Below are positions 7,072-37,538 of a stretch of DNA of 64,000 nucleotides, piece after piece; the first letter of the stretch is position 1; the number at the start of each line of letters is the position of its first letter. Origin of the DNA: Macrostomum lignano. Its lineage: Eukaryota. The translations under genes were made by a program, and so were the position numbers. Location: the NCBI GenBank assembly GCA_002269645.1, contig NIVC01000013.1, forward strand, positions 434,001 to 498,000, in the 5' to 3' direction. Under the pieces are notes generated by a model. It ran no database searches. It was not told the DNA's origin and was given only the letters and a program-made list of their open reading frames with translations.

Positions 7072-7560
7072 TATCAATTAAGGGCGATTTTTTTATCAAT
7101 TAAGGGCGATTATTTTATCCACTAAGGGCCATTTTTTATCAACTAAGGGCGACTTTTTATCAACTAAGGGCAATTTCTATCAATTAAGGGCGATTTTTTT
7201 ATCAATCAAGGGCGATTTTTATCAACTAAGGGCGATTTTTTATCAATTAAGGCCGATTTTTTGATAGGGCGATTTTTTATCAATCAAGGGCGATTTTTTA
7301 TCAACTAAGGGCGATTTTTTATCAATTAAGGGCGATATTTTTATCAATTAAGGGCGATATTTTTATCAATTAAGGGCGATTTTTTATCAATTAAGGGCGA
7401 TTTTTTTATCAATTAGGGTGATTTTTTATCAATTAGGGCGATTATTAGCAACTAAAGGTGAATTTTATCAATTAAGGGCGATTTTGAGCAAATAAGGGTG
7501 ATTTTTAGCAACTTAATGGTGATTTTTATCAATTAATGGCGATTCTTTAGCAACTAAAGC
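7072..7560. repeat. 21-22-bp minisatellite (TATCAATTAAGGGCGATTTTT), about 22 copies, starting about 40 nt past the PI3K stop codon
   Basis: Direct reading. Confidence 0.93.
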
Positions 7561-7600: not shown

Positions 7601-8098
7601 TCACTCTGTATTTACAACCCAGTGACCAACCCAGTCGATTTTTGTGGTCCAAGCATTCTGCAACGCCTCAGTGAGCTGTTTATTGAAGTAGATCAGTGCG
7701 TCCGACTCCCTGCGGTCCAGCGCCAGAGTGGACCTCAGATACTCCAAATCTTGAGGCGACTGCAGCTCCGGGATGCCCGAGTGCAGCATCAGGGTGAACA
7801 GGGTGAGAAACAGGGCCGCGTTCTGGCGCAGCGCCTGGTAGGCTCGGCTGCACAGAGTGGCGAACTGTGTGAACTCGCGCCGGGAAGTCAGCTCGCGCCA
7901 CGTCATGGAGCCGTCCTTGTCCCGGCAGATGATGCGGACGAAGTCCTGCGCGGGATGACGGGGTGCTGATGGGATCGCCGCCTATGTCTGTCTGTCTGTC
8001 TGTCTTCTGTGTTTGTGTCTGTCTGTCTGCCTGTCTGTCTTCTGTGTTTGTGTTTGTCTGTCTGTCTGTCTGTCTGCCTGCCTGCCTGTCTGTTTGCC

Positions 8099-8143
<45 letters not shown>

Positions 8144-8383
8144 TCTGTGTTTGTGTCTGTCTGTCTGTCTGTCTGTCTGCCTGCCTGTCTGTCTGTCTTC
8201 TGTGTTTGTGTTTGTCTGTCTGTCTGTCTGTCTGCCTGTCTGTCTGTCTGTCTGCCTGCCTGTCTGTCTGTCTGCCTGTCTGTCTGTCTGTCTGTCTGTC
8301 TTCTGTGTTTGTGTCTGTCTGTCTGTCTGTCTGCCTGTCTGTCTGTCTGTCTGTCTGCCTGCCTGTCTGTCTGTCTGCCTGCC

Positions 8384-8420
<37 letters not shown>

Positions 8421-8660
8421 TCTGTGTTTGTGTCTGTCTGTCTGTCTGTCTGTCTGCCTGTCTGTCTTCTGTGTTTGTGTCTGTCTGTCTGTCTGTCTGC
8501 CTGTCTGTCTGTCTGTCTGCCTGCCTGTCTGTCTGTCTGTCTGCCTGTCTGTCTGTCTGTCTGCCTGCCTGTCTGTCTGCCTGCCTGTCTTCTGTGTTTG
8601 TGTCTGTCTGTCTGTCTGCCTGTCTGTCTGTCTGTCTGCCTGCCTGTCTGTCTGTCTGCC

Positions 8661-8720
<60 letters not shown>

Positions 8721-14700: not shown

Positions 14701-17700
14701 CATGCCGATTGGCCCAGTTAACAGCGCTAGCCAGCACTGGCAGAGAGGCCGGGTGCCTGGCGCAGCAGTCCTGCCGATAATACCAAACTAAATCGCGCTC
14801 TGAATCTGTCAGTTCGCTCAGACAGTCTCGATTGAGAATGGATTTCAGCTGGTCCTGCAGCTGCTCCTCTTTATTAGGCGGGATCACATCCCAGCCGGGT
14901 CGATTGCTTGACGGAGTCAATGGCGACTGCTGCAGCATAGAGTTCAGGCTGTCCTTGTCGGGGAAGCACAGCCGGGACTCGGGGAACATCACCTGCGTAG
15001 GGCATTGGGTGGCTGTGCGACTTGCGAATCGGCAAAGTGTTGGATTGCTTACTCTGAGAATGTTGGTTTCTGATCCTCATTCACCACCTTCTCCCCTGTG
15101 TAACCGCCCTTGCCTAATCTCTCCCCTTGCCTACCTCTCCCCTTGCCTACCTCTCCCCTTGCCTACCCTCTCCCCTTGCCTACCTCTCCCCTTGACTACC
15201 CTCTCTCTCTTTGCCTACCCTCTCTCCCTTTGCCTACCCTCTCTCCATTTGCCTACCCTCTCTCCCTTTGTCTACCCTCTCCATTGCTTTCCCTCTACCC
15301 CGCCTTTCCTCTCTTCTCTTGACTACCATCTCTCCCCTTGTCTAAATCACCCGCCCTTTTCTAATAAATCATCCTCATTGTCTACCCTCTTTCTCTCTCT
15401 CTTTCCATTTTACCCTCATTTTCCTTGACTACCCTCTCTCTCCCTTTGCCTACCCTCTCTCTCCCCCTTTGCCTACCCTCTCTCTCCCCTTGCCTACCCT
15501 CTCTCCCCTTGCCTAACCCTCTCACTTCTTGTCTAAAGCACCCCTTGTCTATCCCCTCTCTCTTTTTCCATTTTTACCCTCATTTTCCTTGCCTACCCTC
15601 TCTCCCTTTATCTACCCTCTCTCCCTTTATCTACCCTCTCTCCCTTTATCTACCCTCTCTCCCTTTATCTACCCTCTCTCCCTTTATCTACCCTCTCTCC
15701 CTTTATCTACCCTCTCTCCCTTTATCTACCCTCTCTCCCTTTATCTACCCTCTCTCCCCTTGTCCACGCTCTATCCCCATGTCTACCCTCTCTCTCTCTC
15801 CTAGGCGCTCCGCAGCCTCCCAAGCCCCAATAAAGCAGCAGCAGCAGCGGAGGCGGGCTCACCTCAGCCACCGGAGCGTCGCTCTGATTACTACCAAACG
15901 TGGTGCCCAACGGTTTAAGAAAGTCAACAGCCCCAGCCGAGGATTGCTGGCCAACTCCGCCAAGAAACTCTTCAGTCCAGAATCGCATTTGAATTGGTCC
16001 GCTACGCAATTTGCCATCGTAGGCAAATATGTTAACGTTGCTCCAGCCTAGACAGTTGTGCTCGTCAGTAGTGTGACGCCGGACAACATAGCACAGGGCT
16101 AAGCACAGCCTGGCGTATATTGGCAAATTCGATACTAATACGTCGAACATCAGTGGCTCGCTAATGCTTTCAGCATTGCAACTGCGCATAGCTCTAGTGG
16201 TTAGATTGCCGCACAGCGGGGCGCTGCCGCAGTAGATGCCGGCTCTCAGGTACAGCTGACCGTTGGGAGGGTCGGACACTTGAACGCTGGTTACCTGGGG
16301 GGAGGAGAAATGAAGGTCAGACAGTGAGCTGAAATACCTGAAGCATAGATACGGCGATTTAACATGTATATAAGGGAAATAAGGGAATGAGTGGGTGACG
16401 GGAGGCAGAAGAGACCGAGAGGGAGAGGTAGATGGAGAGAGGGGGGATAGGGAGAGGGAGATGGGGAAAGGGAGATGGGGAGAGGAGAGAGAGATGAGGA
16501 GAGGAAGATGGGGAGAGGGAGATGGGGAGAGGGAGATGGGGAGAGGAGAGGGAGATGAGGAGAGGGAGATGGGGAGAGGGGGAGAGGGAGATGAGGAGAG
16601 GGAGATGGGGAGAGGGGGAGAGGGAGATGGGGAGAGGGAGATGAGGAGAGGGAGATGGGGAGAGGGAGATGGGGAGAGGGAGATGGGGAAGGGAGATGGG
16701 GAGAGGAGAGGGAGATGAGGAGAGGGAGATGGGGAGAGGGGGAGAGGGAGATGAGGAGAGGGAGATGGGGAGAGGGAGAGATGGGGAGAGGAGGAGAGGG
16801 AGATGGGGAGAGCGAGAGATGGGGAGAGGAGAGGGAGATGAGGAGAGGGAGAGAGGGAGACTGAGAGGGAGAGGGGAGAAAAGAAGAGGGAGTGGGAGGG
16901 CAAGGGCGAGAGAGAGGGCACAGAGCCGTAGCAGACAGAGCGGCAGCCAACAGAGGGACACACATGAACAGTGAAGTATTCGTTAACGCAATTCCACAGA
17001 TCCATAGGCCGGGCCAAGGCGGGCTGACTCAGCGAGTCCTCGCGCACCATGGCATACGATGAAGACGTAGAAGTCCTATCGGAGGCGGCCAGGTTGCTGA
17101 GGTATTCTGGCATCGAATAGAAATTGCAGCAGCCGGGCTCGCTGACGCTGTCAAAGCTGGGGTCTTTCTCAACCAGCATGAGACAGGGAGTGACATTGGA
17201 GTCTAAGCAGTGCCGGAAATAATCGTACGAACTGAGAGGCGACCGCGATGTTAAATACTGATTGCAGCAGCACACCTTGACCAGGTAGCGATTGGGATTA
17301 ATCTGCTGACGCGACTGAGGCTTGCGGGCGACCTCTTCTACTACAGTTAAAGGATAGCTGCGGTCCAAGTCTAGCTGAATAGTGAATCGCATTGTCTGAT
17401 TGCCGCTGCGGTGAAATACCTGCACCTTGTGAATACTGCTTGGACTGATGGCGGGTCCGGTGAATGACAATCTGTCAGATGAATTGTTCGAAGCGCTGGC
17501 ACTGCTGGTGCTGCTCTTGTGCCGAATAATTGGGCTAGTATCCTCGCAAGTGGCCCCGGTGCGAAAGTGGAACACCTGTTGATATAAATAATCAATGCAA
17601 AGTGTCAGAAATTTACAGGAAGTTAAACATACCTTTGCGTTTTCTAAGAAACGGGAATTCCGAAAATGAAGACAGCAACATAATTAATAACTTAGCAACT

Positions 17701-18917
17701 CTAAAAAGATAAGGAACCCCTAAACAGGGAAATCCCAAACAAGGAGATACCAGTAGGGAAATCTTAAACAAGGAGATTTAGACTACCGGTAGGGATATCC
17801 TAAAGAGGGAAACCTCAAACAAAGATATTCACAGTAGGGAAATCCCAAACAGGGAAACCCCAAACAAGGGGATTCACAGTAGGGAAATTTCAAAAAGGGA
17901 AACTTCAAACAAGGGGATTCACAGTAGGGAAATTTCAAAAAGGGAAACTTCAAACAAGGGGATTCACAGTAGGGAAATCCCAAACAGGGAAACCCCAAAC
18001 AAGGGGATTCACAGTAGGGAAATCCTAAACAAGGAGATTCACAGTAGGGAAATCCCAAACAAGGAGATACCAGTAGGGAAATCCCAAACAGGGAATCCTA
18101 AACCGGTAGGGAAAACCCAGAGGGAACCCTAAACAAGGAGATTCACAGTAGGGAAATCCCAAACAGGGAAACCCCAAACAAGGGGATTCACAGTAGGGAA
18201 ATCCCAAACAGGAAAACCCCAAACAAGGGGATTCACAGTAAGGAAATCCCAAACAGGGAAACCCCAAACAAGGGGATTCACAGTAGGAAAATCCTAAACA
18301 AGGAGATTCACAGTAGCGAAATCCTAAACAAGGAGATTAGGGAAATCCTAAACATGGATAGTCACAGTAGGGAAAACCCAAACGGGGAAACCCCAAACAA
18401 GGGGATTCACAGTATGGAACCCTACAAAACAAAAAGAATAGCAACCGCAGCTAATCATTTTCACCTGGTCGGCGCCGCCATTCCTAGTCTGCTGGCAGGC
18501 GTCTTTCACCGTGGCAAAAGCGGCCCCACGAAAACTGGTAGCCTCGGCGTCCATGACTCGGCCGAGATCCTTGGCGGACACGCCGATCGAATGAAACACC
18601 AACGCTTCCCTAGTTTTGTCGCTTTTCATATCGTGACTCTGACGGAGGCTGAGCATTGGTATAAACAATCTCAATTGGCTCAACCGTTGCGTCTCTTCTA
18701 GGAAATCCTCCGTGGACCCCTCCAGAATTACGCCGCTAAATACGTAACTATCTTGGTCGAGCGATTCCGAATGATACCCGGCCTTGTGCGCCTCCGACCA
18801 GACCAGCTTCTTTAAATCGCACAGCGGCACATCGGCCGAACAGGTGAGCACCAGCAGGAAGCCAGAGGGCAGCAGGACGTCAACGTCCACGCTGCCGCCT
18901 AGTAGTGCGCCGGACAT
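7601..18917 (-). CDS. PIK3CA: Class I phosphatidylinositol 3-kinase catalytic subunit (p110, alpha-like); exons 18465-18917, 16964-17575, 15863-16294, 14448-14992, 13571-13868, 10448-10702, 8843-9172, 7601-7945
   Basis: Full class I domain order: ABD ([19 protein letters not shown]), RBD ([12 protein letters not shown]), C2 (YLRAGIYCG), helical ([12 protein letters not shown]), kinase ([51 protein letters not shown]). All seven coding introns are GT-AG and phase-consistent. The isoform label (alpha versus beta/delta) is uncertain. Confidence 0.9.
7985..8795. repeat. (GTCT)n/(GCCT)n microsatellite with interspersed TCTTCTGTGTTTGTG units, in PI3K intron 7946-8842
   Basis: Direct reading. Confidence 0.95.
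9320..10400. repeat. 25-bp minisatellite (AAAATTATCCCATTCGAGAAATCCT), about 43 copies, in PI3K intron 9173-10447
   Basis: Direct reading; has a 250-bp higher-order period. Confidence 0.95.
10742..13570 (-). repeat. 28-bp minisatellite family X (transcript strand GTCAGTTGCTGGGCCAGCCTCCCAGAGT, with an ATCC variant), about 100 copies, filling PI3K intron 10703-13570
   Basis: Direct reading; the same unit occurs at 52845-53770 and 58670-59070. Confidence 0.97.
13900..14430. repeat. 28-bp minisatellite (CAACCAAAATACCCCAAGACAGGTACCT), about 18 copies, in PI3K intron 13869-14447; unrelated to family X
   Basis: Direct reading; GGTAC core in each unit. Confidence 0.93.
15100..15800. repeat. CT-rich 19-bp minisatellite (TTTATCTACCCTCTCTCCC and the TTGCCTACC variant), in PI3K intron 14993-15862
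   Basis: Direct reading. Confidence 0.9.
16400..16925. repeat. Purine-rich (GGAGAGGGAGATGG-like) degenerate repeat, in PI3K intron 16295-16963
   Basis: Direct reading. Confidence 0.9.
17715..18420. repeat. Composite 30+15-bp (about 45-bp) minisatellite (AAACAAGGGGATTCACAGTAGGGAAATCCC + AAACAGGGAAACCCC), in PI3K intron 17576-18464
   Basis: Direct reading. Confidence 0.9.
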
Positions 18918-21002: not shown

Positions 21003-24000
21003 TCAGTAATCTCCAGAAGCTGCAGCGGCAGCGGCAGCGGCAGCAGCCCGCCGACGGAATCGCGTCTCATTGGGATCAAATCCCTGTTCAGCGGAGCCGT
21101 ACACAGCCCACTCTGGCGTCTCGGCCATATAATCGGCCGCATTGAACCGTTGGCCAGTTTCCACAAATCGTCCATAGAGCTGCTCAAATCTATCGTAATC
21201 AATCCAGGTGTGCCAACGATTGTTAACTAGAAATTTGCGTTTATTAGCCAATAGGACGCAGTTGGAGTGCTCGTGCTCACAGGCGATGTCGTACTGATTG
21301 GCCAGAGAGTCGGCCAAGGCCTGGCTGAACTGCACCACCTCCTTGTGCCAGGGCACGTTGCCCATTGTCAGCTGGCTGGCCTTGCTATCGCCGCAGAATG
21401 TCACTCCTTTCACTTCGATGAAATCTGGGCAGCCGAGATCCACTAGCTTAGCGTATTGTTGCACCTTGATTAGCGGATGGGGGAGGGAGATTATTGTGGC
21501 TGGGGGATTATTATCCCAATTTTGATCTACAAAAAGTGTCCCTAAAAACCTTGAAAAATATCCCAATTCCCAAAATAGTTACATTTCTATACTGAAACAT
21601 ATGAGGGATAATTATCCCCCCCTACTGAAATATTCAAGGGGATAATTATTCTTTCTACTGAAATATCTCAGGGGATAATTATCCTTCCTACTGAAATATT
21701 GCAGGGGATAATTATCCCCCCTACTGAAATATCTCATGGGATAATTATCCTTCCTACTGAAATATCTCAGGAGATAATTATCCTTCCTACTGAAAATCTT
21801 AGGGGATAATTATCCTTCCTACTGAAATATCTCAGGGGATAATTATCCTTCCTACTGAAATATCTCAGGGGATAATTATACTTTCTACTAAAATATCTCA
21901 GGGAATAATTATCCTTTCTACTGAAATATCTCAGGGGATAATTATACTTTCTACTAAAATATCTCAGGGAATAATTATCCTTCCTACTGAAAATCTTAGG
22001 GAATAATTGTCCTCCACTAAAATATCTGGGGGGGGGGGGTAATTAGGTTCACTTTAAATATCTAGAGAACATTAATTACTAACTAAAATAGAAATCATTC
22101 CTAGTTCTTGGGACAATGATCCTCTACCAAAAAAAGTATCTCAAGCTCCCCCACACAGCAACAAACCTCCTCGGTGTTCCAAGCCTTGACCAGAGTCAGC
22201 CGGTACACGGTCCGCTGGCCGCAGTCGCGCATAGCCCGCAGGCAATCGATAAAACGCTGCCAGAAATCCTTGAACAGAGGCCTGTCGATGCGTTTCAAGC
22301 TATCCGGCGTGGCTGCGTCAACCGATACGTAAAGTTGCGTAACAGGCGGCAGTTGACGCATCGCTTCGGGGAACTGAGCGTTAGTAACTAGGAACGAAGA
22401 GATGCCGGATGTGTGCAACAGGTGCAACAGCTGGTTGATGCGCGGATACATGATTGGCTCGCCCACTAGGCTGAGTGCGCAATGGCGCGGCTGCATGCCT
22501 TCGGAGATGCGCTCGGGCATGACGCCGGGCACTCCGCGGAATTCCCGTATCATCCGCCTGCGGCGGGTGGGGTTAGTTTGTAAGGCAATTGTGATTAAGA
22601 GCATCTAAGCCTTCGAGTGGGGATCTCGGAGATCATTACTTTAAGTGGAGCTGATTCTCATTCCTAGATTCTTACTAAGGATATCACAATTCCTTATTGG
22701 GATTCCCCTAGATTCCTAACTGGGATTACCCTAGATTCCCCATTCGGATTCTCTTACAGTCCTTATTGGGATTCCCCTAGATTCCTCATTGGGATTCCCC
22801 TAGATCCTTTATTCGGATTCGCCTAGATTCCTCATTGGGATTCCCCTAGATTCTTTATTCGGATTCCCCTAGATTCCTTATTGGGATTCCCGTAGATTCC
22901 TCATTGGGATTCCCCTAGATCCTTTATTCGGATTCTCCTAGATTCCTTATTGGGATTTCCCTTGATTCGTCATTGGGATTCCGCTAGATTCTTTATTTGG
23001 GTTCTCCTAGATTCCTTATTGGGATTCCCCTAGCTTCCTCATTGGGATTCCCCTAGATCCTTTATTCGGATTCTCCTAGATTCCTTATTGGGATTTCCCT
23101 TGATTCCTCATTGGGATTCCGCTAGATTCTTTATTTGTGTTCTCCTAGATTCCTTATTGGGATTCCCCTAGCTTCCTCATTGGGATTCCCCTAGATCCTT
23201 TATTCGGATTCTCCTAGATTCCTTATTGGGATTTCCCTTGATTCCTCATTGGGATTCCGCTAGATTCTTTATTTGTGTTCTCCTAGATTCCTTATTGGGA
23301 TTCCCCTAGCTTCCTCATTGGGATTCCCCTAGATCCTTTATTCGGATTCTCCTAGATTCCTTATTGGGATTTCCCTTGATTCCTCATTGGGATTCCGCTA
23401 GATTCTTTATTTGTGTTCTCCTAGATTCCTTATTGGGATTCCCCTAGATTCCCAACTCGGATTTCCCTTGATTCCTCATTGGTATTCCCTAGATTCTTTT
23501 TTCGGATTCTCCTAGATTCCTTATTGGGATTCCTTTAGATTCTTTATTGGGATTCCTTTAGATTCTTAATTGGGATTTTCCCAGATTCACTATTCGGATT
23601 CTCCTTGATTCCTCATTGGGATTCCCCTAGATTTCTAATTGGGATTTCCTTGATTCCTCATTGGGATTCCCCTAGATTTCTAATTGGGATTTCCTTGATT
23701 CCTCATTGGGATTCCCCTAGATTCTTTAATCGGATTCTCCTAGATTCCTCATTCGGATGCTCCTAGCTTTCTTTTTAGGATTCCCCTAGATTCCTCATTG
23801 GGATTTCTCCTAGATACTAAAAAGGGATACCCCTAGATTTGTAATTAGGATTCCCTTGGATACTAAAAAGGATATCCCCTATAAACTCCAATAGACCTCC
23901 GCCATCGCTCACCTGTGAGCATCCAAAGCGCCCGATAGAATCTCGTCGGGCGGATCTTCCAACCAGCGCCACTCGGTGCCCACCGGATTAGTGTGATGCC

Positions 24001-26505
24001 GCCAACAGAAGACACATTTATTGGCGCAGGCCAGAGAAGGCGTGGCCTCCATGCACCGGTGCGAGGCGATGCCATAGAATGCGTGCTTGTAGCAGCCGCC
24101 GCGGCCTCGCAGCATGGATTTGGTCCATCGGCACAGCTTGACGCCGGAATGACTGCCAATCAATCGGTAGCCTTGCTTCTCTAACGATTTACGAACTAAC
24201 GGCGTAACCATAGCTCGTCTGGTTGTGGCTTCTTGGCCAAGTTTCTGCTTCTGATTGCTTCTAGTAGCAGACGACAACACACCGCCAATATCTTCAACGT
24301 CTACTAGGCCTTCTTGATCTTCCTCATCTAGATTATCATTATCAACGTCTGAATGGTCTTCGGCAACATCTGACGCCGCTTCCGCGCCTTGGCAACAAGC
24401 TGAATTGCCGGTAGCCTCTGAACAGCAAGCTGATTTATTTTTCTTACTAACCAAAGGATCCAACAGTTGAGATTGAAGCGCGGCCTGAAAGTCGGCCTCT
24501 TGACCGCCGTGGCCGGTTGCTGAGGCGACATTTTCGTCTAGCAGAACTGGCGGCCGCAGACGGGTGCCAGACAGCTGAGTCAGCTGCTCGTCAACACGCT
24601 TGGCTATCTGACAGTTTTTTTGAAGGAAACAAAGAGAGGCTCGCTGTGGTGGAGGCCAAGCATTCGGAGACGGAGAGAATGGACGGAGATAGGAAAGGGG
24701 GAAGGGGGAGAAGGGAGGCAGAAAAAACGGAGAGAAGTAAAGGAGAGAGGGGAGCAAGGGGGAGAGGGCGAGAAAGGGGAAGAGAGAGAAGGCGAGAGAG
24801 AGGGAGAGAGAGAAAGAAAGAAAGGGGGTGAGAGAGAGGGAGGCGGATTGGCGGGAGAGAGGGAAAGAGAGGGCGAGAGAGGGAAAGGAGAGGGGGAGAG
24901 GGGGAGGGGAAGAGGGTGAGAGAGAGAGGGGAAGGGGTAGAGGGTGAGAGGAGAATGGAGAGGGGAGGGAGGGAGAGCGACGAAAAGAAAGTGAAGGGGG
25001 AGTAGAAAAATTAAAAGCCTCACCAAATTGTAATTCTCAGCGTAGAGCGAGTTGCCCAGGCCGATGACAATGAACCTCAATCCGCTTAGGTGGCCCCTTT
25101 CAACGCGCCAATCTTCGGCCGCTTCGGCCAGCCATTTGCAGAACCAGGCGCCGGTATCGGGAGGCGAGCCGCCTTCGTAGGTTGGCAACAGAAAGTAGCA
25201 GAGGGTGTCGGGAGACTGGGAAAGGTCAGGGGTTAAATTGAATGAGAATTGCATTTCGATAATGGATTAACAAATTTTTATAGTTGATTATCGGACTTTG
25301 ATATTGGATTACCGGATTTTGATATTGGATTACCGGATTTTGATATTGGATTATCGGATTTTGATATGGGATTATCGGATTTTGATATTTGATTAACGGA
25401 TTTTTTATATTAGATTATTGGATTTTGATATTAGATTAACGGATTTTGATATTAGATTTACGGATTTTGATATTGGATTTACGGATTTTGATATTAGATT
25501 ATTGGATTTTGATATTAGATTAACGGATTTTGATATTAGATTTACGGATTTTGATATTGGATTTACGGATTTTGATATTGGATTATCGGATTTTGATATT
25601 GGATTATCGGATTTTGATATTGGATTTACGGATTTTGATATTGGATTTACGGATTTTGATATTGGATTATCGGATTTTGATATTGGATTTACGGATTTTG
25701 ATATTGGATTTACGGATTTTGATATTGGATTATCGGATTTTGATATTGGATTTACGGATTTTGATATTGGATTTACGGATTTTGATATTGGATTATCGGA
25801 TATTGATATTGGATTATCGGATATTTATATTGGATTATAAAGAAATAAATGAAAACCCACCTCTTTATGCAGACTCTCCTCTGGATCATAATTAGCCAAA
25901 TCAATCAATTCAATGCCAGCAGAATCGCTACTACTAACAGTAGTAGATTTGCACGCTTCACCGTCGCCACCGTTGCAACACTGAGACTGCTGTTGCTGCT
26001 TTTGTTGTTTCAACACACCAGCCAGTTCGGCTAGAAGCAGAGTGGCAAAATGTTTAGCTCTGCCTAGTTGGCTAGCGTAGAACACGCGCACTTTATTAAA
26101 GGTCTCGTCAACGCTTCCATTAGCTGTACTTGTGCAACTTGTAGTAGGCAGCATTGCCTTGCGAGTTGTTGGACTCCTCAACGACATTTGACTACTACTT
26201 GAAAGTACCGCTTTCTGTTTGGATGAAAAAACGACAACAAAATTTGTGTTATGCTACTAAAAGTAGAAAAGTGAGAATAAAATTGTAAATCAGTAAGAAA
26301 AAAATTTAGTTTTCTTAATTAAAATTACCTTGACAGACGACGCGCTAATCACGTGACCTTGACGGCCGCGACGTTGAAACAAAATCCATGCGCCAACAAC
26401 AGAAGCAGCCAATAGAAGAGAATAAGAGAGAGCGCTGCTGTTTTGCAGAGCTCGACTTATGTGAACAGTCAGGTCCCAGTGCGACATTTTGCTTGCTGAT
26501 TGCAT
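21003..26505 (-). CDS. TYW1: S-adenosyl-L-methionine-dependent tRNA 4-demethylwyosine synthase; exons 26329-26505, 25861-26214, 25024-25215, 23913-24607, 22167-22557, 21003-21464
   Basis: N-terminal hydrophobic anchor, flavodoxin domain (VFYASQLG, GLGNSLY) and radical-SAM domain (GSHSGVKLCRWTK, CYKHAFYGIASHRCMEATPSLACANKCVFCWRH, HCALSLVGEP, PDFIEVKGVTFCG, HEHSNC). Splice phases are consistent. The start could be M1 (26505) or the downstream MSHWDL. Confidence 0.95.
21585..22025. repeat. 33-bp minisatellite (GGGGATAATTATCCTTCCTACTGAAATATCTCA), about 13 copies, in TYW1 intron 21465-22166
   Basis: Direct reading; contains the palindrome GGATAATTATCC. Confidence 0.93.
22690..23870. repeat. 23-bp minisatellite (ATTGGGATTCCCCTAGATTCCTC and variants), about 50 copies, in TYW1 intron 22558-23912
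   Basis: Direct reading; has a 138-bp higher-order block. Confidence 0.93.
24680..25000. repeat. GA-rich low-complexity tract, in TYW1 intron 24608-25023
   Basis: Direct reading. Confidence 0.85.
25280..25835. repeat. 21-bp minisatellite (TTTTGATATTGGATTTACGGA / TTATCGGA), about 26 copies, in TYW1 intron 25216-25860
   Basis: Direct reading. Confidence 0.94.
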
Positions 26506-31120: not shown

Positions 31121-31595
31121 AGCCCGCATCCTCGGATAACGGGGGCGCTTTCACTACTCAAGATTCAGCGATTTGTACAAGGACGAAGAAGCTACGTTGC
31201 TGGAAAAATTTTAGGAGGCATATGCTTTTTCGAAAAAAAATTGCAGAGATGGATCGACGATCGAGGTTTAGATTAAATAATTTTGAATTAATTACAAGAA
31301 GCAATTATATGATGAGTGATCCAGGTACTACATGTATGTTCTTCGAAAATCTACTTTACAAGTCTATCTGGACACAATCTAGCGGCTTAACTTTGAATCT
31401 GGTTTAGGTCGTTTCGGTAAAAATTTGTTGTCTAGTGATCAATAAGATTACAACGCGTTATATTATATTTTGTTGTACATGTATTTGACATATTTTTTGC
31501 GTATTTTTCTTATATCTATAAGTAGAGTCTAAAAAACCCACTAGATTTTCCGTTCTCCGTTCATCGAGTACTATGTAGGTTTCGTTATGCTACGT

Positions 31596-31950
31596 CAGGG
31601 GCGTAGCCAGGAATTTTGATTGGGGGGGGGGCCGTGAGTTAGGGGGCGCCAGCTTCTTATAGGGGGGGCGCCAGTTTCTTTTAGGGGGGGAGCGCCAGTT
31701 TCTTATAGGGGGGGGCGCCAGTTTCTTTTAGGGGGGGGCGCCAGTTTCTTATAGGGGGGCGCCAGTTTCTTTTAGGGGGGTGCCAGTTTCTTTTAGAGGG
31801 GGGGGGGCGCCAGTTTCTTTTAGGGGGGGGGGGCGCCAGTTTCTTTTAGGGGGGGGCGCCAGTTTCTTTTAGGGGGGGGGGCGCCAAGGCCAGAGTTGGT
31901 GATTGGGGGGGGGCCACGGCCCCCCTTGCCCCCCTCTGGCTACGCCCCTG
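31596..31950. mobile_element. hAT-type MITE (355 bp) with an internal G-rich minisatellite
   Basis: Perfect 15-bp TIRs CAGGGGCGTAGCCAG / CTGGCTACGCCCCTG. Perfect 8-bp TSD TGCTACGT at 31588-31595 and 31951-31958. About 9 internal copies of GGGGGCGCCAGTTTCTT(T/A)TAG. Confidence 0.93.
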
Positions 31951-32590
31951 TGCTACGTGTAGTAGCCAAAGCATTGCTGCTTATTACATGTATATCTGTA
32001 GGCTCCAACCTAGCGTATCCCTTTAAACCTAACGCCTAGATCGTTTCATAAGAATTCTTTGGTTGCCTTAAGCTGCTTAGAATACAAGCTGCAACCCGCG
32101 GCCTTGCCTGGTCAAGGCTAGAGCGCTTTTTCTTAGTCTGACAAAAGTTAAGTCGTTGGCGGCACTTCATACGAGCGTATTCATGACAAATTTATCGATT
32201 TTTTAGATTTTATATACGTTATTTTGTTTCGGTCCAGCCATGTACATATACACGCAAAATAAATATACTGGAGCGGTATATATTACATGTGAGATTACTA
32301 ACTTTTCTACTAGCTGCAACTGCAAGTACAACTGCAATACTCAACAAAATATTAGATTTGGTGAGTGGTCATTTCGATTTTTATACATTTACAATATTGA
32401 ATAGTGCAGGGCGGGTTTCAGTTAATAATACATGCAACGTACACTTCAGTTATCGATTGGCCTTTTCGGACACTGACAAAACCAAGGCCAGTCTCAAAGC
32501 AAAAAAGTAACGAAATGGAAATCGAAACGCGAAAAAACTGAAAGCATGAAACGAGAACCTAAGGCGAGAAAGCGACGGTAAGAGTTTACG

Positions 32591-33679
32591 ATGACTAAAG
32601 AAGAATCCGACAGCCTTCACGTCAAACTGCTGCTCGAGTATTCCCAGTTTAGGGAAATAGACCGACTCGCGAGTTGGCTCAAGAAACGCACTCAACGGTT
32701 TCAGCCAGCTGAGCATAGAAATCAGAAGAAAAGGACGAAAATTCAATTCGGTCGTTGGCTCATCACCATGCAGACCACCGATGGTCAGCAAATGTCCGAG
32801 ACATTCCGTCTGCTGCCACAGAAGTTGAGCGATAACAGAAGCAAAGTTGAGTTCGTGAAATCGCTCTGCCGGAGCTTCAGCGACATGTCGAGCGACGAAG
32901 CGACGCATCTGGTAGAGTCGCTGCTGTCCATGATCGATCAGTTTCTACAAAGAAAGATTAATATCGCTAAGGTGAAGAAAACCGCGAAGCTGCGATACGA
33001 GGAGGCCGGCAGTCGAGGCCGCATCACATTTGGGGAATTCTGGACGCCTTGGAGCAAGCGAGTCAAGCAGCTGGTCGAGCTGTGCGGTGAGCAGCGGGCC
33101 GCGCTGGTGTGCCTTCGCTACTACAGCCTGAGTATGTTCAGAGGCGGCGAGTCCAGCCTCTGCCCCAAAGCTTTCGATGCCCTGTTCGAGCTGGGCAAAG
33201 CCGCTCACGAGGGCTTCGCTTCGCCCCTCAATTGTCAGCTACTGGGTCGGCAAGGAGCAAAGTTCTGCAGCCTGTTCCCTGACACTGACAGCGTATTCGG
33301 CAGTCTGGGCGACTTTTTTCGCATAGACCTGATGCAGAATCCAGGCGGCTGGGTGCTCAACCCCCCATTTGAAGAGATCCTGCTCAGAGCCACAGCGAGG
33401 CGAGTTGTTGACATCCTTGACGAGTCGGAGCGGGGAGCTTTCTGGTTCTTCCTCATCTTTCCGTACTGGACAGACTGCGACGGCTGGAAGATCCTGGACG
33501 AGTCCGAATGGAAAGTTGACAGAATTGATGTGAAGCCAAATCAGCTGGAGGTTCAGGATTGCTACGGCTTCACGCTGACTGTGCAGGTCACGGTGAGCCT
33601 GTTCACCATGGGGGAGCCGCCAGACTCCGTCAACCTCGCCAAGCTTTGGGACGCGATGAGAACAGACGCTGGCGAGTGA
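32591..33679 (+). CDS. Intronless PCIF1/CAPAM-like N6-adenine methyltransferase (362 aa, no WW domain)
   Basis: Motifs LRY..., EGFASPLNC, FCSLFPDTDSVFGSLGDFF, VLNPPFEE (NPPF at 33359-33370) and FFLIFPYW match the PCIF1 methyltransferase core (human ECFASPLNC..YCSAFPDTDGYFGSRG..ANPPF..FIVFIPEW, as recalled). FGRW..LLP resembles PCIF1 FNRW..DPLLP. AATAAA at 33699-33704. Confidence 0.85.
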   Translation: MTKEESDSLHVKLLLEYSQFREIDRLASWLKKRTQRFQPAEHRNQKKRTKIQFGRWLITMQTTDGQQMSETFRLLPQKLSDNRSKVEFVKSLCRSFSDMSSDEATHLVESLLSMIDQFLQRKINIAKVKKTAKLRYEEAGSRGRITFGEFWTPWSKRVKQLVELCGEQRAALVCLRYYSLSMFRGGESSLCPKAFDALFELGKAAHEGFASPLNCQLLGRQGAKFCSLFPDTDSVFGSLGDFFRIDLMQNPGGWVLNPPFEEILLRATARRVVDILDESERGAFWFFLIFPYWTDCDGWKILDESEWKVDRIDVKPNQLEVQDCYGFTLTVQVTVSLFTMGEPPDSVNLAKLWDAMRTDAGE

Positions 33680-33819
33680 CAGAAATGAGATCCTATCCAA
33701 TAAAGTAAAAATTTTACTGAGTGACATTGTACATGTATATGAAATTTCTCCGAGTACTCGTACTTGTATTAAAACCTTGACGTTTGTCGCAATTTTTAAT
33801 GCATCTCTTTAGTTCATCT

Positions 33820-34155
33820 GCACTCCCCTCTGTTTACTCTATTTTCTCTCCAACTTTCCAGTTCAGACTTGTTGTCTCTCTCTCCCTCCCCTCTTTGTCT
33901 AGTAAAGTCTTGTTATTCTTATCTCTCTCCCTCGTGGCCTTCTGATTGGTTCTTCAATCTGGCCTCTTTCCTCAGTCGCGCACTCTAACCCCCTCGCCTC
34001 TGTTTACTCTATTTTCTCTCCAACTTTCCAGTTCAAACTTGTTGTCTCTCTCTCCCTCCCCTCTTTGTCTAGTAAAGTCTTGTTATTCTTATCTCTCTCC
34101 CTCGTGGCCTTCTGATTGGTTCTTCAATCTGGCCTCTTTCCTCAGTCGCGCACTC
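33820..34155. repeat. Near-perfect direct duplication, period about 171 bp, pyrimidine-rich, about 140 bp downstream of the PCIF1-like gene
   Basis: CCTCTGTTTACTCT...CAGTCGCGCACTC occurs from about 33827 and again from about 33997. Confidence 0.9.
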
Positions 34156-34739: not shown

Positions 34740-35400
34740 GAACAAGCAGGCGACACCCCAGGAGAAGCGACTATCCGTCCTAGCGGACGTCCTAGACTCT
34801 CCATCCTAGCGCTGCTGTCTAGCTCAGCTGAAGGAGCTCAACGCCTGCTAGACCAGCTGACGGCGGCGGCCGCTGTGCAGTGATCAGCGGTCTAGTGCTA
34901 AGCATCATGGACGACATGGCACGGCGCAGGGCGCTTTCCTGGAGCGCATTCCGCACGGTGCGGACTGTCCTGCAGTGCCTCGCGCTGCCGGATCGGCTGA
35001 GAAGGCGGCTGTTCCAGGCAGTCATAGAAACGGTCCTCCTTTACAATACCAAAAGGTGGACACTGACCGGCCCACAAGAGCGGCAACTCGGCACCGTTTA
35101 TGCTGGACTTCCGCGAGCCGCCTTCGGTGTCTACTACTCGCCGACCGCCACCACCAACACCAACTGCTGCGCATGCGACGTTTACAGCTGGCCGGTCATG
35201 TCATCCGAGAAGAGCATTACTGCCCTGAGCCACTGCAGGACGCGCTGCTGCTCTCCCGTCAAGGACCGCGGCGGCTTGGTCAGACAAAAAGTCTGTGTTT
35301 CATTGACCTGCTTAATTCTAAGAGATGCTGAGATTTCTAACCCTCGTGGACTCGCTGTTCTGCGCAACTCTGCGCTTGCGCGCGCATTTTGACACTAGCC
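34740..35400 (+). pseudogene. Decayed non-LTR retrotransposon (RTE-like) reverse-transcriptase C-terminal fragment
   Basis: Fragments ILALLSSSAEGAQRLLDQLTAAA, RRALSWSAF..RLFQAVIETVLLYN..WTLT and RRLQLAGHVIR resemble the post-YADD and thumb regions of RTE-type RTs. The sequence is interrupted by stops and frameshifts, and no YADD motif is present. Confidence 0.78.
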
Positions 35401-35716: not shown

Positions 35717-37538
35717 TCAATCTTCACCCTCGTCCTCATTGATCGGAGTCAATTTTTCGTCCTTGACTTCTCCAGCCTCCGCGCCGCCTTCCCCTTCACC
35801 GCGTGCGTCTGGGGTGCCATCGGCGCTAGTGCCATTCTCGGCGCCGTTTCCGTCGTCCGTCGATCCGGGAAGCGGCTCGGGACTTCCGTAGTTTGGCGGC
35901 TCCGGCAGCAGCTCGTATCGCTTGGCGTAGACGCTCGGAGCGAAGCCGAACGCATCGAGAGCGGTGTCGCTCTGTTCGACAGACTTGGCGGCGGCCGCCT
36001 CGCGAAGAATTTCAACAAAGTTCTGGCCGGCTCCGTAGGCATAGTGCAGCGGTAGGCGGCCAAAGCTGTCAGCGAGTCGAAGCAGGTCTGGGTGCTCGTT
36101 GGCTAGGTAACGAGCAGTGTCTTGGTTTTTGCAAAGCAGGGCAATGTGCAGCGCCGAGAGGCTCTCTCTAGTGCGAGAGAACACATCTTCAATTTGCTGC
36201 TGATCTTGCTGTTGCTTGCAGTGCTGCTCCAGATGCTCTCGAGTTCCTTTGGCGCTGAGCTTCCACAGCTCCCTGTAGCGAGCCTCCCACTTGGACACGG
36301 AGTCCACAATTAGCTTGCTGGCCTCCGGCAGACCTTTGAGCTTGGGACCGAACGACTTTTTCAGGCTTGGCAAACTGCTCCCATAGTCGTTGGCCAGCAG
36401 CCAGCGGAGGTGTTCGACTTTCTCTTCGCGCATCCAACGGATCACCAAACTGTCAAGCTCCTTGACAACGGCGTCGTTTTTAGTGGCTTGAGCTGCGTCG
36501 CGAACGTTCATTCCCTGGAATATGTTAGAGATTTTCCATTAGACACTTTTCGATCTGTTTAATTTTCAGAACTGTCAGCCCCTGTAGGCTATGCATTCGT
36601 TAGGAAAAGGGCATTTTACGTTTCTCAAACTCCACAACCCCCCAATCACAACCGACTTCCCTCTCCCAAAACTTCATTCTGATGCCGTGCAACACCCTGA
36701 AACCGACGAATGTCGGCCAAACGTCGGTGTTACAAGCACCTAAAAGTGTTCATACACCAACGACTTTGGGTAGATGTGAGAAACATCGCGGAAATAGCGG
36801 AACTATGTTTCAAAATTCTTGTTGACCGAATTTCACCTTGTTCAATGTTAATTCTGCTACTTCAGAAGTCCCAATTTGTAGAATACCTTGGGTGAAAATA
36901 GAGTTGTGAAAGCATCCACAAAAAGCGCACCAGCTCAATCCAGCATTCATCGACGCCCTCACCTGTGCGTCGCGAGCGCAGAAGTTGTGCCCATCGTGCA
37001 GCATTCGCAGCAGAGTCTCGACATCGCAGCTGGATCGCACCGCCGCGTGCAACGGCGTCGCGCCGGTTTTGTTTCGCGTCTCGCCTCGCTTCGACGGCAG
37101 AGCGAGCGTCTCAACCGGTACAGACTGGCGCAGCTGCTCCAGCTCCTCGCGACGACGCTGCTCTTCGCGCTCACGTTGCAGCCGTTGCTCCTCGGCTATG
37201 GCCCGTTGTCGCGCCTCCTCCTGCAGCTGGCCAATGCGCGCCTGGCGAATCTCTTCAATCTCTTCGTCGCGTTCTCGACAATAATCGACGGTTCGACGAT
37301 AGTTCATCAGACGCTGGGCCACGAACTCGATCGGATCGTCCGGACGGCAGGCGGCCGCTTCGGATAATGCGAGGGCGAGCGCGCTGCCAACAGTTTCACG
37401 AGCGTAGACTGAGTCCGGATGCTGCTGCTCGTCAATGACGAAGGATTTGGGCTTAGGAGCTCGGAGGAACATGTTGTGCACGTCGGAGTTGGCCGGCGTC
37501 ACCTGGCTAGGATCGATTTCGATTTCTGAGCTGGCCAT
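35717..37538 (-). CDS. DPY30/DYDC-like dimerisation-motif protein with a coiled coil and ankyrin repeats; exons 36963-37538 and 35717-36514
   Basis: YARETVGSALALALSEAAACRPDDPIEFVAQRL is a Dpy-30/RIIa-like motif. Ankyrin motifs are GATPLHAAV, SALHIALL and GRLPLHYA. The phase-0 GT-AG intron 36515-36962 joins ARDAQ|GMNVRDAA. Confidence 0.85.

What the first reader, a model, noticed from the sequence alone, without database searches (positions are those of the whole stretch)
32591..33679. Intronless, WW-less PCIF1/CAPAM-like adenine-N6 methyltransferase in a transposon-rich accessory tract
Seen: a single-exon 362-aa ORF with an intact FASPLN / FCSLFPDTD..FGS.G.FF / NPPF core and AATAAA 20 nt after the stop. 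It is flanked by a hAT MITE, a mariner remnant, a direct duplication and an RTE remnant, while every recognisable conserved gene nearby is spliced. Known: animal PCIF1 is about twice this size, carries an N-terminal WW domain that binds phospho-CTD of RNA polymerase II, and makes cap-adjacent m6Am; NPPF is its catalytic motif IV. Here there is no WW domain, the helical region is short, and there is an insertion (LLGRQGAK) between FASPLNC and FCS. Inference: this is not the ordinary orthologue. It could be (a) a horizontally acquired or virus-derived compact PCIF1 homologue, (b) cargo of a large mobile element, or (c) a specialised paralogue acting Pol II-independently, for example on spliced-leader or snRNA caps in a trans-splicing animal.
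Basis: partly seen in the sequence, partly recalled or inferred. Interest (0 to 1): 0.8.

Follow-up and report, generated by a model that had tools for sequence, protein, structure and literature searches.

The report
Compact PCIF1-like methyltransferase gene in flatworm
An intact, intron-free flatworm (Macrostomum) gene copy encodes a short relative of PCIF1, the enzyme that methylates the adenine next to the mRNA cap; it is one recent copy in a multi-copy, non-standard branch of that family, not a unique oddity.

Summary
Window 32591-33679 (+) is an intact 362-aa ORF with a strong PCIF1 methyltransferase-domain match (Pfam PF12237, E 3.9e-28), an NPPF motif, no WW domain and AATAAA after the stop. 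A confident structure model (pLDDT 89) matches human and zebrafish CAPAM over both the helical and methyltransferase domains.

It is not a singleton. Macrostomum lignano carries at least five paralogue groups of WW-less PCIF1-like genes. Some have GT-AG introns, one group has lost the catalytic Asn, and one locus holds three tandem units. The window copy belongs to an intronless sub-lineage with at least four sequences 85-92% identical in protein; one of these has a frameshift. Homology to two M. lignano loci covers only about 1.3-1.9 kb, without poly(A), terminal repeats or synteny.

All flatworm-type sequences form one clade (92% bootstrap) that does not group with human, zebrafish or dinoflagellate PCIF1. 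The "LLGRQGAK insertion" is a signature they share with compact homologues in cultured bacteria and metagenomes. The deep origin is unresolved.

Recent horizontal transfer, contamination and mobile-element cargo are not supported. Substrate and expression are untested. This is a new member of a known family, of moderate interest.

The parts
32591..33679 (+). Intact single-exon ORF, 362 aa, PCIF1/CAPAM-like methyltransferase without a WW domain
   Evidence: ORF; PF12237, E 3.9e-28; AF2 pLDDT 89; Foldseek 6irw E 5e-13, TMq 0.65; in-frame stop 4 codons upstream.
32591..33085 (+). N-terminal reduced helical domain (about aa 1-165): five helices and a beta-hairpin. It includes R55, which aligns with the human m7G contact R235.
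   Evidence: Secondary structure. Whole-length match to CAPAM helical plus methyltransferase domains. Profile alignment to human PCIF1 with large human-only blocks. R55 is at least 90% conserved in alignment A6.
33086..33676 (+). Rossmann-fold methyltransferase domain (about aa 166-362)
   Evidence: Pfam stretch aa 169-319; PDB alignment aa 185-295; strands and helices.
33233..33265 (+).
   Evidence: 5 residues longer than human and zebrafish. The spacer is 11 aa in 14 of 14 scored flatworm-type sequences, 10 of 11 bacterial sequences and 45 of 52 scored other metagenome sequences. It is 6 or 8 aa in 20 of 20 canonical-cluster sequences.
33359..33370 (+). Catalytic motif IV, NPPF (aa 257-260). 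It is followed by E262, which aligns with the human cap contact E558.
   Evidence: N257 is at least 90% conserved and P258 invariant across 27 sequences. Contact residues taken from PMC13290413.
33554..33568 (+). Clade-specific loop QDCYG (aa 322-326), in the position of the canonical substrate-binding loop
   Evidence: Q322, D323, Y325 and G326 are invariant in the 10-sequence clade alignment. A motif of this type occurs in 13 of 15 flatworm-type sequences and in 0 of 112 others.
33699..33704 (+). AATAAA polyadenylation-signal hexamer, also present in the M. lignano sister locus
   Evidence: alignment with L001.
32410..33752 (+). Continuous segment homologous to M. lignano loci L001 and L014: about 180 bp of 5' flank, the ORF and about 70 bp of 3' flank. 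Further patches extend to 34358.
   Evidence: blastn hits 32465-33730/33731 to both loci. MAFFT extends the homology to 32410 and beyond the polyA signal. ORF 93.6% identical with 1 in-frame indel. Flanks 73-84% identical with 6-8 indel events. No shared neighbouring genes.
33823..34155 (+). Tandem duplication of a 170-bp unit in the 3' flank (2 copies, 98-99% identical). L001 has matches of 62-95 bp to both copies.

Best explanation
The ORF is a real, intact, intronless gene copy from Macrostomum lignano or a very close relative. It belongs to a lineage-expanded family of compact PCIF1/CAPAM-like SAM-dependent methyltransferases.

Shown:
- The protein has the two-domain catalytic module of CAPAM: a shortened helical domain packed on a Rossmann methyltransferase domain with an intact NPPF motif.
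- It has no WW domain.
- It is one of at least four recently diverged copies, 85-92% identical in protein. Homology to other loci is limited to about 1.3-1.9 kb, with no shared neighbouring genes.
- The whole flatworm-type family forms its own clade and carries a spacer signature shared with compact homologues of bacteria and uncultured microbes, not with canonical animal or dinoflagellate PCIF1.

Inferred:
- It binds SAM and methylates an exocyclic amino group in the NPPF pocket. The most likely target is N6 of an adenosine at or near an RNA 5' end, as in PCIF1.
- It would do so without WW-mediated recruitment to the phosphorylated Pol II CTD.
- The family is either an old horizontal acquisition or an old paralogue, later naturalised and amplified, with introns in some members. 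It is not the vertical orthologue of human PCIF1.
- This particular copy is probably still under weak constraint, concentrated on the catalytic core.
For: Identity and fold:
- Pfam PF12237 E 3.9e-28.
- AF2 pLDDT 89, pTM 0.87.
- Foldseek top hits are human and zebrafish CAPAM, E 5e-13, TMq 0.65.
- The nearly invariant family columns, all numbered on the window protein, are all present in it.
- Human m7G contacts R235, E558 and W588 (PMC13290413) align with R55, E262 and W293.

Family in M. lignano:
- Gene models Mlig030305, Mlig031925, Mlig015920 (three models), Mlig000263 (three models, each with three tandem units), Mlig008908 (three models) and Mlig021227/007261/016061. All carry PF12237 only.
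- The P0003 gene has two GT-AG introns that reproduce the annotated protein exactly. P0004 has at least four introns. P0001 and P0058 are intronless.

Clade and subfamily:
- Flatworm-type clade bootstrap is 91-92 of 100 and 57 of 60.
- The spacer indel character separates it from the canonical cluster.
- Its core scores 208 bits against the compact-metagenome profile and 108 bits against the canonical profile.

Resident host gene:
- GC3 is 0.69 against 0.56-0.66 in neighbouring host exons.
- It lies between TYW1 and an Ank/Dpy-30 gene.

Constraint:
- The ORF is 93.6% identical to L001 with one in-frame indel. The flanks are 73-84% identical with 6-8 indel events.
- Nucleotides 481-840 are 97-99% identical among three copies, against 84-97% elsewhere in the ORF.
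- dN/dS is 0.53 in the methyltransferase core.
- The chance that 70 neutral substitutions produce no stop codon is 0.07.
Against: - Overall dN/dS against the closest copy is 0.85, and about 1 in the N-terminal domain.
- A sister copy (L014) already carries one frameshift, so this sub-lineage is at least partly decaying.
- No expression evidence is available here.
- The compact subfamily also occurs in cultured bacteria, which have no caps. Homology to PCIF1 therefore does not fix the substrate.
- R55 and W293 are conserved in the compact metagenome relatives (alignment A6) too, so they do not prove cap binding.
- Two of the five human cap contacts (P591, P592) are not conserved.
- Deep nodes of the tree have under 15% support.
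- The 'other metagenome' profile was built from sequences picked for their similarity to this protein, which inflates that score.
- I could not establish whether Macrostomum also has a canonical WW-PCIF1.
Confidence: 0.6

Rival explanations
1. It is the ordinary vertical flatworm orthologue of PCIF1 that lost the WW domain, shrank its helical domain and evolved fast. Its separation from human PCIF1 would then be a long-branch artefact.
For: [quoted passage not shown]
- The model matches CAPAM over both domains.
- Three cap-contact residues are retained.
- Deep nodes are unresolved.
- The capped searches returned no canonical Macrostomum PCIF1. This is weak evidence, because those searches cannot prove absence.
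Against: - The 11-residue spacer is shared with 10 of 11 bacterial and 45 of 52 scored metagenome sequences. All 20 canonical-cluster sequences, including dinoflagellates, have 6 or 8 residues.
- Dinoflagellate sequences are far closer to human PCIF1 than the flatworm ones are. The A1 profile scores 271 bits against human PCIF1; the window protein scores 44 bits.
- Kimura distances from the window are 2.06 to human and 1.2-1.5 to the GC-rich compact group.
Confidence: 0.2
2. This particular copy is a non-functional duplicate that has simply not yet been disrupted. Under this reading the family may be functional, but this locus is a pseudogene in waiting.
For: - dN/dS is 0.85 overall.
- It sits in a repeat-rich intergenic tract.
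- A sister copy has one frameshift and only its C-terminal half is annotated.
- The closest paralogue group has lost the catalytic Asn.
- No exact-match gene product is on record.
Against: - There are no stops and no frameshift across 1086 nt at 6.4% divergence (p about 0.07 for stops alone).
- All near-invariant family residues are retained.
- The core is 3-4 times less diverged than the ORF ends, and the ORF is far less diverged than its flanks.
- The AATAAA and about 180 bp of upstream sequence are co-conserved with L001.
Confidence: 0.25
3. The enzyme acts on something other than cap-adjacent adenosine, such as DNA adenine, internal RNA adenine or a protein amide, as its bacterial relatives must.
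For: - Homologues with PF12237 occur in cultured Psychroflexus and Salibacter chromosomes among housekeeping genes, where no cap exists.
- The substrate-loop motif QDCYG is unique to the flatworm clade and differs from the canonical loop.
- The family derives from M.EcoKI/M.TaqI-type DNA methyltransferases (PMC4738411).
Against: - The CAPAM-type helical domain, which contributes to cap and RNA binding in CAPAM (PMC8287941), is retained.
- Counterparts of R235, E558 and W588 are present.
Confidence: 0.2
4. It is cargo or a derivative of a mobile element (for example the methyltransferase domain of a DIRS1-type retrotransposon or of a large DNA element), or a processed retrocopy.
For: - DIRS1 polyproteins carry PCIF1-derived methyltransferase domains (PMC4738411).
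- The copy is intronless while paralogues are spliced.
- The copies lie at non-syntenic loci.
- Repeats flank it.
Against: - No inverted or long terminal repeats lie around the unit.
- No reverse transcriptase, RNase H, recombinase or transposase domain was found in the neighbouring ORFs scanned.
- The NPPF motif is intact, whereas DIRS1 copies are reported as degenerate.
- There is no poly(A) tract. Homology with sister loci runs past the polyA signal and about 180 bp upstream of the ATG.
Confidence: 0.04
5. It is contaminant (bacterial, viral or protist) DNA in the assembly, or a very recent horizontal transfer.
For: The nearest non-flatworm relatives are metagenomic. They include a dense small-gene contig, an Iamiaceae-binned contig and RNA-polymerase fusions typical of giant viruses.
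Against: - It is contiguous with spliced host genes in the same window.
- Its GC3 is host-like.
- The top hits are all M. lignano paralogues, with 14 NCBI gene models listed on 12 or more contigs.
- Some paralogues have GT-AG introns.
- Identity to any bacterial or viral sequence is only 24-53% over partial lengths.
Confidence: 0.02

Closest known systems
Vertebrate PCIF1/CAPAM (PDB 6IRV-6IS0), the cap-specific m6Am methyltransferase
   Same: - Same Pfam domain.
- Same two-domain helical plus Rossmann fold.
- NPPF catalytic motif present.
- Counterparts of the m7G contacts R235, E558 and W588 are present.
   Different: - No WW domain and no long linker.
- The helical domain lacks two large blocks.
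- 11-residue spacer after SPLN instead of 6.
- Different substrate-loop motif.
- P591/P592 counterparts absent.
- Only 15-17% identity in the structural alignment.
- Does not group with it in trees.
Macrostomum lignano PF12237-only paralogues (for example BOX15_Mlig030305g1, Mlig015920, Mlig008908, Mlig021227, Mlig000263)
   Same: - 87% identity to Mlig030305g1.
- Same clade, 91-92% bootstrap.
- Same spacer and same QD.YG-type loop.
- Same architecture.
   Different: - The window copy sits at a different, non-syntenic locus.
- Mlig008908 and Mlig021227 have introns.
- Mlig015920 has Gly in place of the catalytic Asn.
- Mlig000263 has three tandem units.
Compact PCIF1-like proteins of giant viruses (for example Cafeteria roenbergensis virus 362-aa protein, Bodo saltans virus, pithoviruses, salmon gill poxvirus, giant-virus MAGs)
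   Same: - Same size class and a WW-less helical-plus-methyltransferase architecture.
- Foldseek E 1e-10 to 4e-15, with TM up to 0.69-0.72.
   Different: - Sequence identity only 11-35%.
- Kimura distances of 1.6-2.8, no closer than human at 2.1.
- They do not group with the flatworm clade.
Bacterial and metagenomic compact PF12237 proteins (Psychroflexus spp., Salibacter halophilus, MAGs binned to Iamiaceae, Myxococcota and Saprospiraceae; the GC-rich metagenome group P0062-P0066)
   Same: - 11-residue spacer.
- Length of 330-400 aa.
- Lowest distances to the window protein, 1.2-1.5.
- 29-53% identity.
   Different: - They lack the flatworm-specific loop motif.
- Prokaryotic genomic context: next to a release-factor gene, an ArsC-family gene and fumarase in P. 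longus.
- A sister relationship is not supported by bootstrap.
Methyltransferase domain of DIRS1-type retrotransposons
   Same: Described as PCIF1-derived (PMC4738411).
   Different: - It is embedded in a polyprotein and reported as catalytically degenerate.
- Here the ORF stands alone, NPPF is intact and no retroelement domains were found nearby.

Membership tests
PCIF1/CAPAM superfamily (Pfam PF12237) | Match to the PF12237 profile above the gathering score | tested here: met
   98.6 bits against a cut-off of 31.1, E 3.9e-28, profile positions 23-171 of 176.
PCIF1/CAPAM superfamily (Pfam PF12237) | Catalytic (N/D)PP(F/Y/W) motif IV intact | tested here: met
   NPPF at aa 257-260. N257 is at least 90% conserved and P258 invariant in A1.
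PCIF1/CAPAM superfamily (Pfam PF12237) | Helical domain N-terminal to, and packed on, the Rossmann methyltransferase domain | tested here: met
   AF2 pLDDT 89. Foldseek alignment to 6irw spans the whole model, TMq 0.65. The domain is shortened.
Cap-specific m6Am methyltransferase (the function of PCIF1) | Residues that contact m7G (human R235, E558, W588, P591, P592) | tested here: inconclusive
   R55, E262 and W293 align with the first three. P591 and P592 have no counterpart. R55 and W293 are also conserved in the compact metagenome relatives of alignment A6, so they are not diagnostic.
Cap-specific m6Am methyltransferase (the function of PCIF1) | m7G-cap-dependent N6-methylation of the first transcribed Am | not testable with these tools
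   No biochemical or modification data are available.
Canonical animal PCIF1 orthologue | N-terminal WW domain that binds the phosphorylated Pol II CTD | tested here: not met
   No WW in Pfam. The protein starts four codons after an in-frame stop, and no WW-like pattern lies in the 6 kb upstream. All 15 clade members scored carry PF12237 only.
Canonical animal PCIF1 orthologue | Groups with metazoan PCIF1 in a phylogeny and has the short (6-8 aa) SPLN-CS spacer | tested here: not met
   The flatworm clade lies outside the human, zebrafish and protist cluster, which has 61% support. The spacer is 11 aa against 6 or 8 in 20 of 20 canonical-cluster sequences. Deep nodes are weak, and only two animal sequences were available.
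DIRS1 retrotransposon methyltransferase domain | Embedded in a polyprotein with reverse transcriptase, RNase H and tyrosine recombinase; catalytic motif degenerate | tested here: not met
   The ORF stands alone and NPPF is intact. No such domains were found in the neighbouring ORFs scanned. No terminal repeats.
Processed retrocopy | Intronless copy of a spliced parent, bounded by the transcript ends, with a poly(A) tract and target-site duplication | tested here: not met
   It is intronless while P0003 and P0004 are spliced. However, there is no poly(A) tract, and homology to sister loci runs about 180 bp upstream of the ATG and past the polyA signal. An older retroposition founding the intronless sub-lineage cannot be excluded.
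Giant-virus-derived gene | Nested among viral homologues in a phylogeny, or lying in a viral-like genomic island | tested here: inconclusive
   Giant-virus MAG relatives are 24-35% identical and do not group with the flatworm clade. Some close metagenome hits are fused to RNA polymerase subunits, but their taxa are unknown. The window flanks are host genes.

The most novel reading that the evidence does not exclude
The flatworm-type clade may descend from a compact prokaryotic or viral PCIF1-like gene acquired horizontally long ago. Under this reading it was naturalised (introns, host codon usage) and amplified in Macrostomum. It would now act on a non-canonical substrate independently of the Pol II CTD, for example the 5' end of spliced-leader RNA, and might stand in for a lost canonical PCIF1. 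The Asn-less paralogues would serve as non-catalytic binders.
Probability: 0.15. Interest if true: 0.7.

Novelty: new member of a known kind. Interest (0 to 1): 0.4.

Why it matters
PCIF1 is usually described as a single-copy, WW-bearing, Pol II-coupled enzyme in animals.

This locus shows that a regenerative flatworm model carries a whole family of WW-less, compact PCIF1-like genes. In signature and similarity they resemble bacterial and uncultured-microbe homologues more than vertebrate PCIF1. The family includes young duplicates, tandem arrays and copies that have lost the catalytic Asn.

If the family is expressed, it gives a natural system for two questions: what PCIF1-type enzymes do when uncoupled from the CTD, and whether cap-adjacent methylation exists in a trans-splicing animal. 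It would also be a candidate case of an old horizontal acquisition of an RNA-modification enzyme.

As it stands, the finding is a correct annotation plus a family-level observation. It is not a new kind of system.

Tried and rejected
1. A canonical WW-PCIF1 in Macrostomum. Three word-indexed protein searches returned only PF12237-only proteins. The exhaustive search lists only the best 150 of 2136 hits. Absence therefore cannot be claimed.
2. Transposon labels for the flanks. Pfam and PDB sequence searches of the putative RTE and mariner pieces found nothing.
3. Terminal inverted or direct repeats bounding the duplicated unit. None were found.
4. Synteny with the M. lignano sister locus. No neighbouring gene is shared. 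The only extra hit is a 47%-identical TE-like 85-aa segment.
5. Exact-product look-ups for the window ORF and two neighbouring ORFs. None is on record, so the assembly and exact species stay undetermined.
6. Taxon of the non-Macrostomum clade members P0005, P0067, P0061 and P0060. Only UniParc, Logan and JGI identifiers are available.
7. Deep placement by neighbour-joining with bootstrap. It remains unresolved.
It succeeded with a narrower alignment.
9. Rfam and tRNA scans of the window were empty.
10. Literature on PCIF1 in flatworms or giant viruses. Nothing relevant was found.
11. A suspected inverted duplication at 5.8-9.0 kb was rejected. The long multi-frame ORFs there and at 10.7-13.6 kb are minisatellite arrays.
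Full report
**1. The observation**

Window 32591-33679 (+) is an uninterrupted 362-aa ORF from ATG to TGA. An in-frame stop lies four codons upstream. AATAAA sits at 33699-33704.

The ORF matches Pfam PF12237, the PCIF1 methyltransferase region, at E 3.9e-28 and 98.6 bits against a cut-off of 31.1. It matches the crystallised human and zebrafish PCIF1/CAPAM at E 1e-10 over aa 185-295. All the quoted motifs are present, including NPPF at aa 257-260.

No WW domain is detected in the protein. No uninterrupted W...W..P pattern exists in the 6 kb upstream on the same strand. A six-frame scan with family profiles finds only this one PCIF1-like unit in the 64 kb.

**2. The fold**

An AlphaFold2 model built on a 27-sequence alignment is confident (mean pLDDT 89, pTM 0.87). 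Its best PDB matches are human and zebrafish CAPAM (E 5e-13 to 5e-11, TMq 0.53-0.65). The alignment spans both the N-terminal helical part and the Rossmann domain.

A profile alignment to human PCIF1 shows the same domain order, with two large human-only blocks. The helical domain here is therefore genuinely reduced.

Among predicted viral structures, the best matches are compact PCIF1-like proteins of giant viruses and a poxvirus (for example a 362-aa Cafeteria roenbergensis virus protein, TM 0.69), at only 11-21% identity.

**3. Organism and family**

The best protein hit is Macrostomum lignano BOX15_Mlig030305g1 (P0001, 361 aa, 87% identity). The next hits are further M. lignano proteins. 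Cluster look-ups and an exhaustive HMMER search show a multigene family in that species:
- Mlig030305 and Mlig031925, plus a UniParc sequence.
- Mlig015920, three gene models.
- Mlig000263, three gene models, each with three tandem PCIF1-like units.
- Mlig008908, three gene models.
- Mlig021227, Mlig007261 and Mlig016061.

Every member carries PF12237 only.

Gene structures differ:
- The P0003 gene has two canonical GT-AG introns that reproduce the annotated protein exactly.
- The P0004 gene has at least four introns.
- P0001 and P0058 are single-exon, like the window ORF.

The P0058 group is the sister of the window sub-lineage (87% bootstrap). It has Gly instead of the catalytic Asn.

**4. 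This copy and its nearest relatives**

Against the M. lignano loci of P0001 (L001) and P0211 (L014), blastn homology covers window 32465-33730/33731 only. Global alignment extends it to about 32410 upstream, past the polyA signal, and in patches to 34358. No neighbouring gene is shared. No poly(A) tract or terminal repeats bound the unit. The copies therefore arose by DNA-level duplication of a small segment, not by a recent retroposition or a recognisable transposon.

The four sequences of this sub-lineage (window, P0001, P0211, P0212) are 85-92% identical in protein. They share variants in a mosaic way, which suggests gene conversion. The L014 copy has one frameshift, and only its C-terminal half is annotated.

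**5. Is this copy constrained?**

- dN/dS against P0001 is 0.85 overall: about 1.07 in the N-terminal domain, 0.53 in the methyltransferase core and 0.93 at the C-terminus.
- The ORF is 93.6% identical to L001 with a single in-frame indel. The homologous flanks are 73-84% identical with 6-8 indel events.
- Nucleotides 481-840 are 97-99% identical among three copies, against 84-97% elsewhere in the ORF.
- Seventy random substitutions leave both copies free of stops only 7% of the time.

I read this as weak, core-focused constraint, possibly combined with gene conversion. It is not proven function.

**6. Place in the wider family**

The exhaustive search found 2136 relatives at E of 0.001 or better. 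Neighbour-joining trees of the core domain (110-127 sequences) recover one clade that holds all Macrostomum paralogues. It also holds four sequences of unknown taxon (P0005, P0061, P0060, P0067). Support is 91-92 of 100 and 57 of 60 bootstraps.

Human and zebrafish PCIF1 fall with dinoflagellate and other protist sequences (61% support). All deeper nodes are unresolved, with under 15% support.

A discrete character helps. The spacer between the SPLN motif and the following CS motif has these lengths:
- 11 residues in 14 of 14 scored flatworm-type sequences.
- 11 residues in 10 of 11 sequences from bacterial genomes.
- 11 residues in 45 of 52 scored other metagenome hits.
- 6 or 8 residues in all 20 sequences of the canonical cluster.

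The 'LLGRQGAK insertion' is therefore the signature of a compact, non-canonical subfamily.

Profile scoring agrees, with the caveat that the metagenome set was picked by similarity to this protein. The window core scores 208 bits on the compact-metagenome profile, 119 on the bacterial, 108 on the canonical and 97 on the giant-virus profile.

Kimura distances from the window protein:
- 1.2-1.4 to a GC-rich metagenome group.
- 1.47 to an Iamiaceae-binned contig.
- 1.5-1.9 to the other bacterial sequences (mainly Bacteroidota).
- 1.6-2.8 to giant-virus MAG sequences.
- 1.84 to a dinoflagellate.
- 2.06 to human.

Bacterial homologues are real. They occur in more than ten cultured Psychroflexus strains and in Salibacter. 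In P. longus the gene lies among housekeeping genes: a class-I peptide-chain release factor gene, an ArsC-family gene and fumarase. Some close metagenome relatives are fused to RNA polymerase subunits, XRN or a GT8 glycosyltransferase.

A loop motif, QDCYG in the window protein, is invariant at four positions in the clade and absent from all 112 other sequences.

**7. Resident gene, not contamination**

The ORF lies between spliced host genes on the minus strand: PI3K at 15.7-18.9 kb, TYW1 at 21.0-26.2 kb and an ankyrin/Dpy-30 protein at 35.7-37.5 kb. Its GC (0.55) and GC3 (0.69) resemble those of the host exons. The intergenic tract is repeat-rich: a hAT-like MITE, a 23-bp minisatellite and a 170-bp tandem duplication.

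**8. Mechanism**

Shown: the CAPAM-type catalytic module is present with an intact NPPF, and there is no WW domain.

By alignment, the human m7G-contact residues R235, E558 and W588 (PMC13290413) correspond to R55, E262 and W293. P591 and P592 have no counterpart.

The WW domain is reported to be dispensable for catalysis and to serve Pol II CTD binding (PMC8287941). A WW-less enzyme can therefore be active but would not be recruited in that way.

Inferred: SAM-dependent N6-methylation of an adenosine at or near an RNA 5' end. This inference is weakened by the bacterial members of the subfamily and by the clade-specific substrate loop. Whether spliced-leader RNA, snRNA, mRNA or something else is the target cannot be told from sequence.

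**9. Verdict**

The claim 'not the ordinary orthologue' is supported. The more exotic options, a recent horizontal or viral gene or mobile-element cargo, are not.

This is a recent copy in a Macrostomum-expanded, non-canonical PCIF1-like family whose deep origin is unresolved. I found no paper on PCIF1 in flatworms. The M. lignano paralogues are, however, already in public databases, automatically named 'PCIF1 WW domain-containing protein'. I classify the finding as a new member of a known kind, of moderate interest.

Noticed in passing
window 31588-31958: A 355-bp MITE (31596-31950) with perfect 15-bp terminal inverted repeats (CAGGGGCGTAGCCAG) and an 8-bp target-site duplication (TGCTACGT), which is hAT-like. 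Its interior is a 23-bp minisatellite of about 10 copies (31642-31879).
   Followed up: yes
window 6019-6561, 7064-7557, 7985-8790, 9291-10411, 10746-13570, 13898-14428, 15118-15794, 16421-16879: Very dense mini- and microsatellite arrays, for example a 28-bp unit in 101 copies spanning 2.8 kb. The 880-984-aa multi-frame 'ORFs' at 10.7-13.7 kb and their weak Pfam hits are artefacts of these arrays.
   Followed up: yes
window 15722-18917 (-), 21003-26187 (-), 35717-37538 (-): Spliced host genes flank the finding. They are a PI3K catalytic subunit (p85-binding, Ras-binding and C2 domains), TYW1 (flavodoxin and wyosine-formation domains) and an ankyrin-repeat/Dpy-30-motif protein.
   Followed up: partly
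L007 6001-7119 (M. lignano Mlig015920; P0058, P0204, P0205, P0059): The paralogue group closest to the window sub-lineage has Gly in place of the catalytic Asn of NPPF. The rest of the domain is conserved, so these are candidate non-catalytic family members. A second, partial copy (92% identical over aa 242-372) lies at the start of the same locus.
   Followed up: partly
L006 8001-14499 (M. lignano Mlig000263): One 1283-aa gene model contains three complete tandem PCIF1-like units, each with NPPF, carried by three separate long ORFs. It is probably three tandem genes merged by the gene predictor.
   Followed up: partly
L002 8224-10410: Downstream of the P0003 gene there are further PCIF1-like coding pieces (48-62% identity to P0003). 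They partly lie inside a gene model annotated as a mitochondrial carrier, which suggests an unannotated or decayed tandem paralogue.
   Followed up: no
L014 (M. lignano NIVC01000382.1), about 9.3-10.6 kb: A third genomic copy of the window sub-lineage is about 92-94% identical to the window at the nucleotide level. It has one frameshift, and only the C-terminal 184 aa are annotated. L014 and L001 share about 4 kb of flanks with each other, but not with the window.
   Followed up: yes
L019 4485-5465 (Psychroflexus longus) and 38 other bacterial loci, L015-L053: PF12237 'PCIF1' domain proteins of about 330 aa occur in cultured Bacteroidota (over ten Psychroflexus strains, plus Salibacter) and in several MAG lineages. 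In P. longus the gene follows a class-I peptide-chain release factor gene and an ArsC-family gene on the same strand. The bacterial function is unknown.
   Followed up: partly
proteins P0101, P0143, P0123, P0062, P0073 (metagenome): Close metagenomic relatives are fused to RNA polymerase Rpb1 or Rpb2 domains, to an XRN 5'-3' exonuclease, or to a GT8 glycosyltransferase. In contig L004 the GT8 gene is a separate upstream neighbour.
   Followed up: no
window 34883-35137 and L001 12235-12489: A TE-like 85-aa coding segment (47% identical between the two loci) lies about 1.2 kb downstream of the PCIF1-like ORF at both loci, in opposite orientations. It gave no Pfam or PDB hit.
   Followed up: partly
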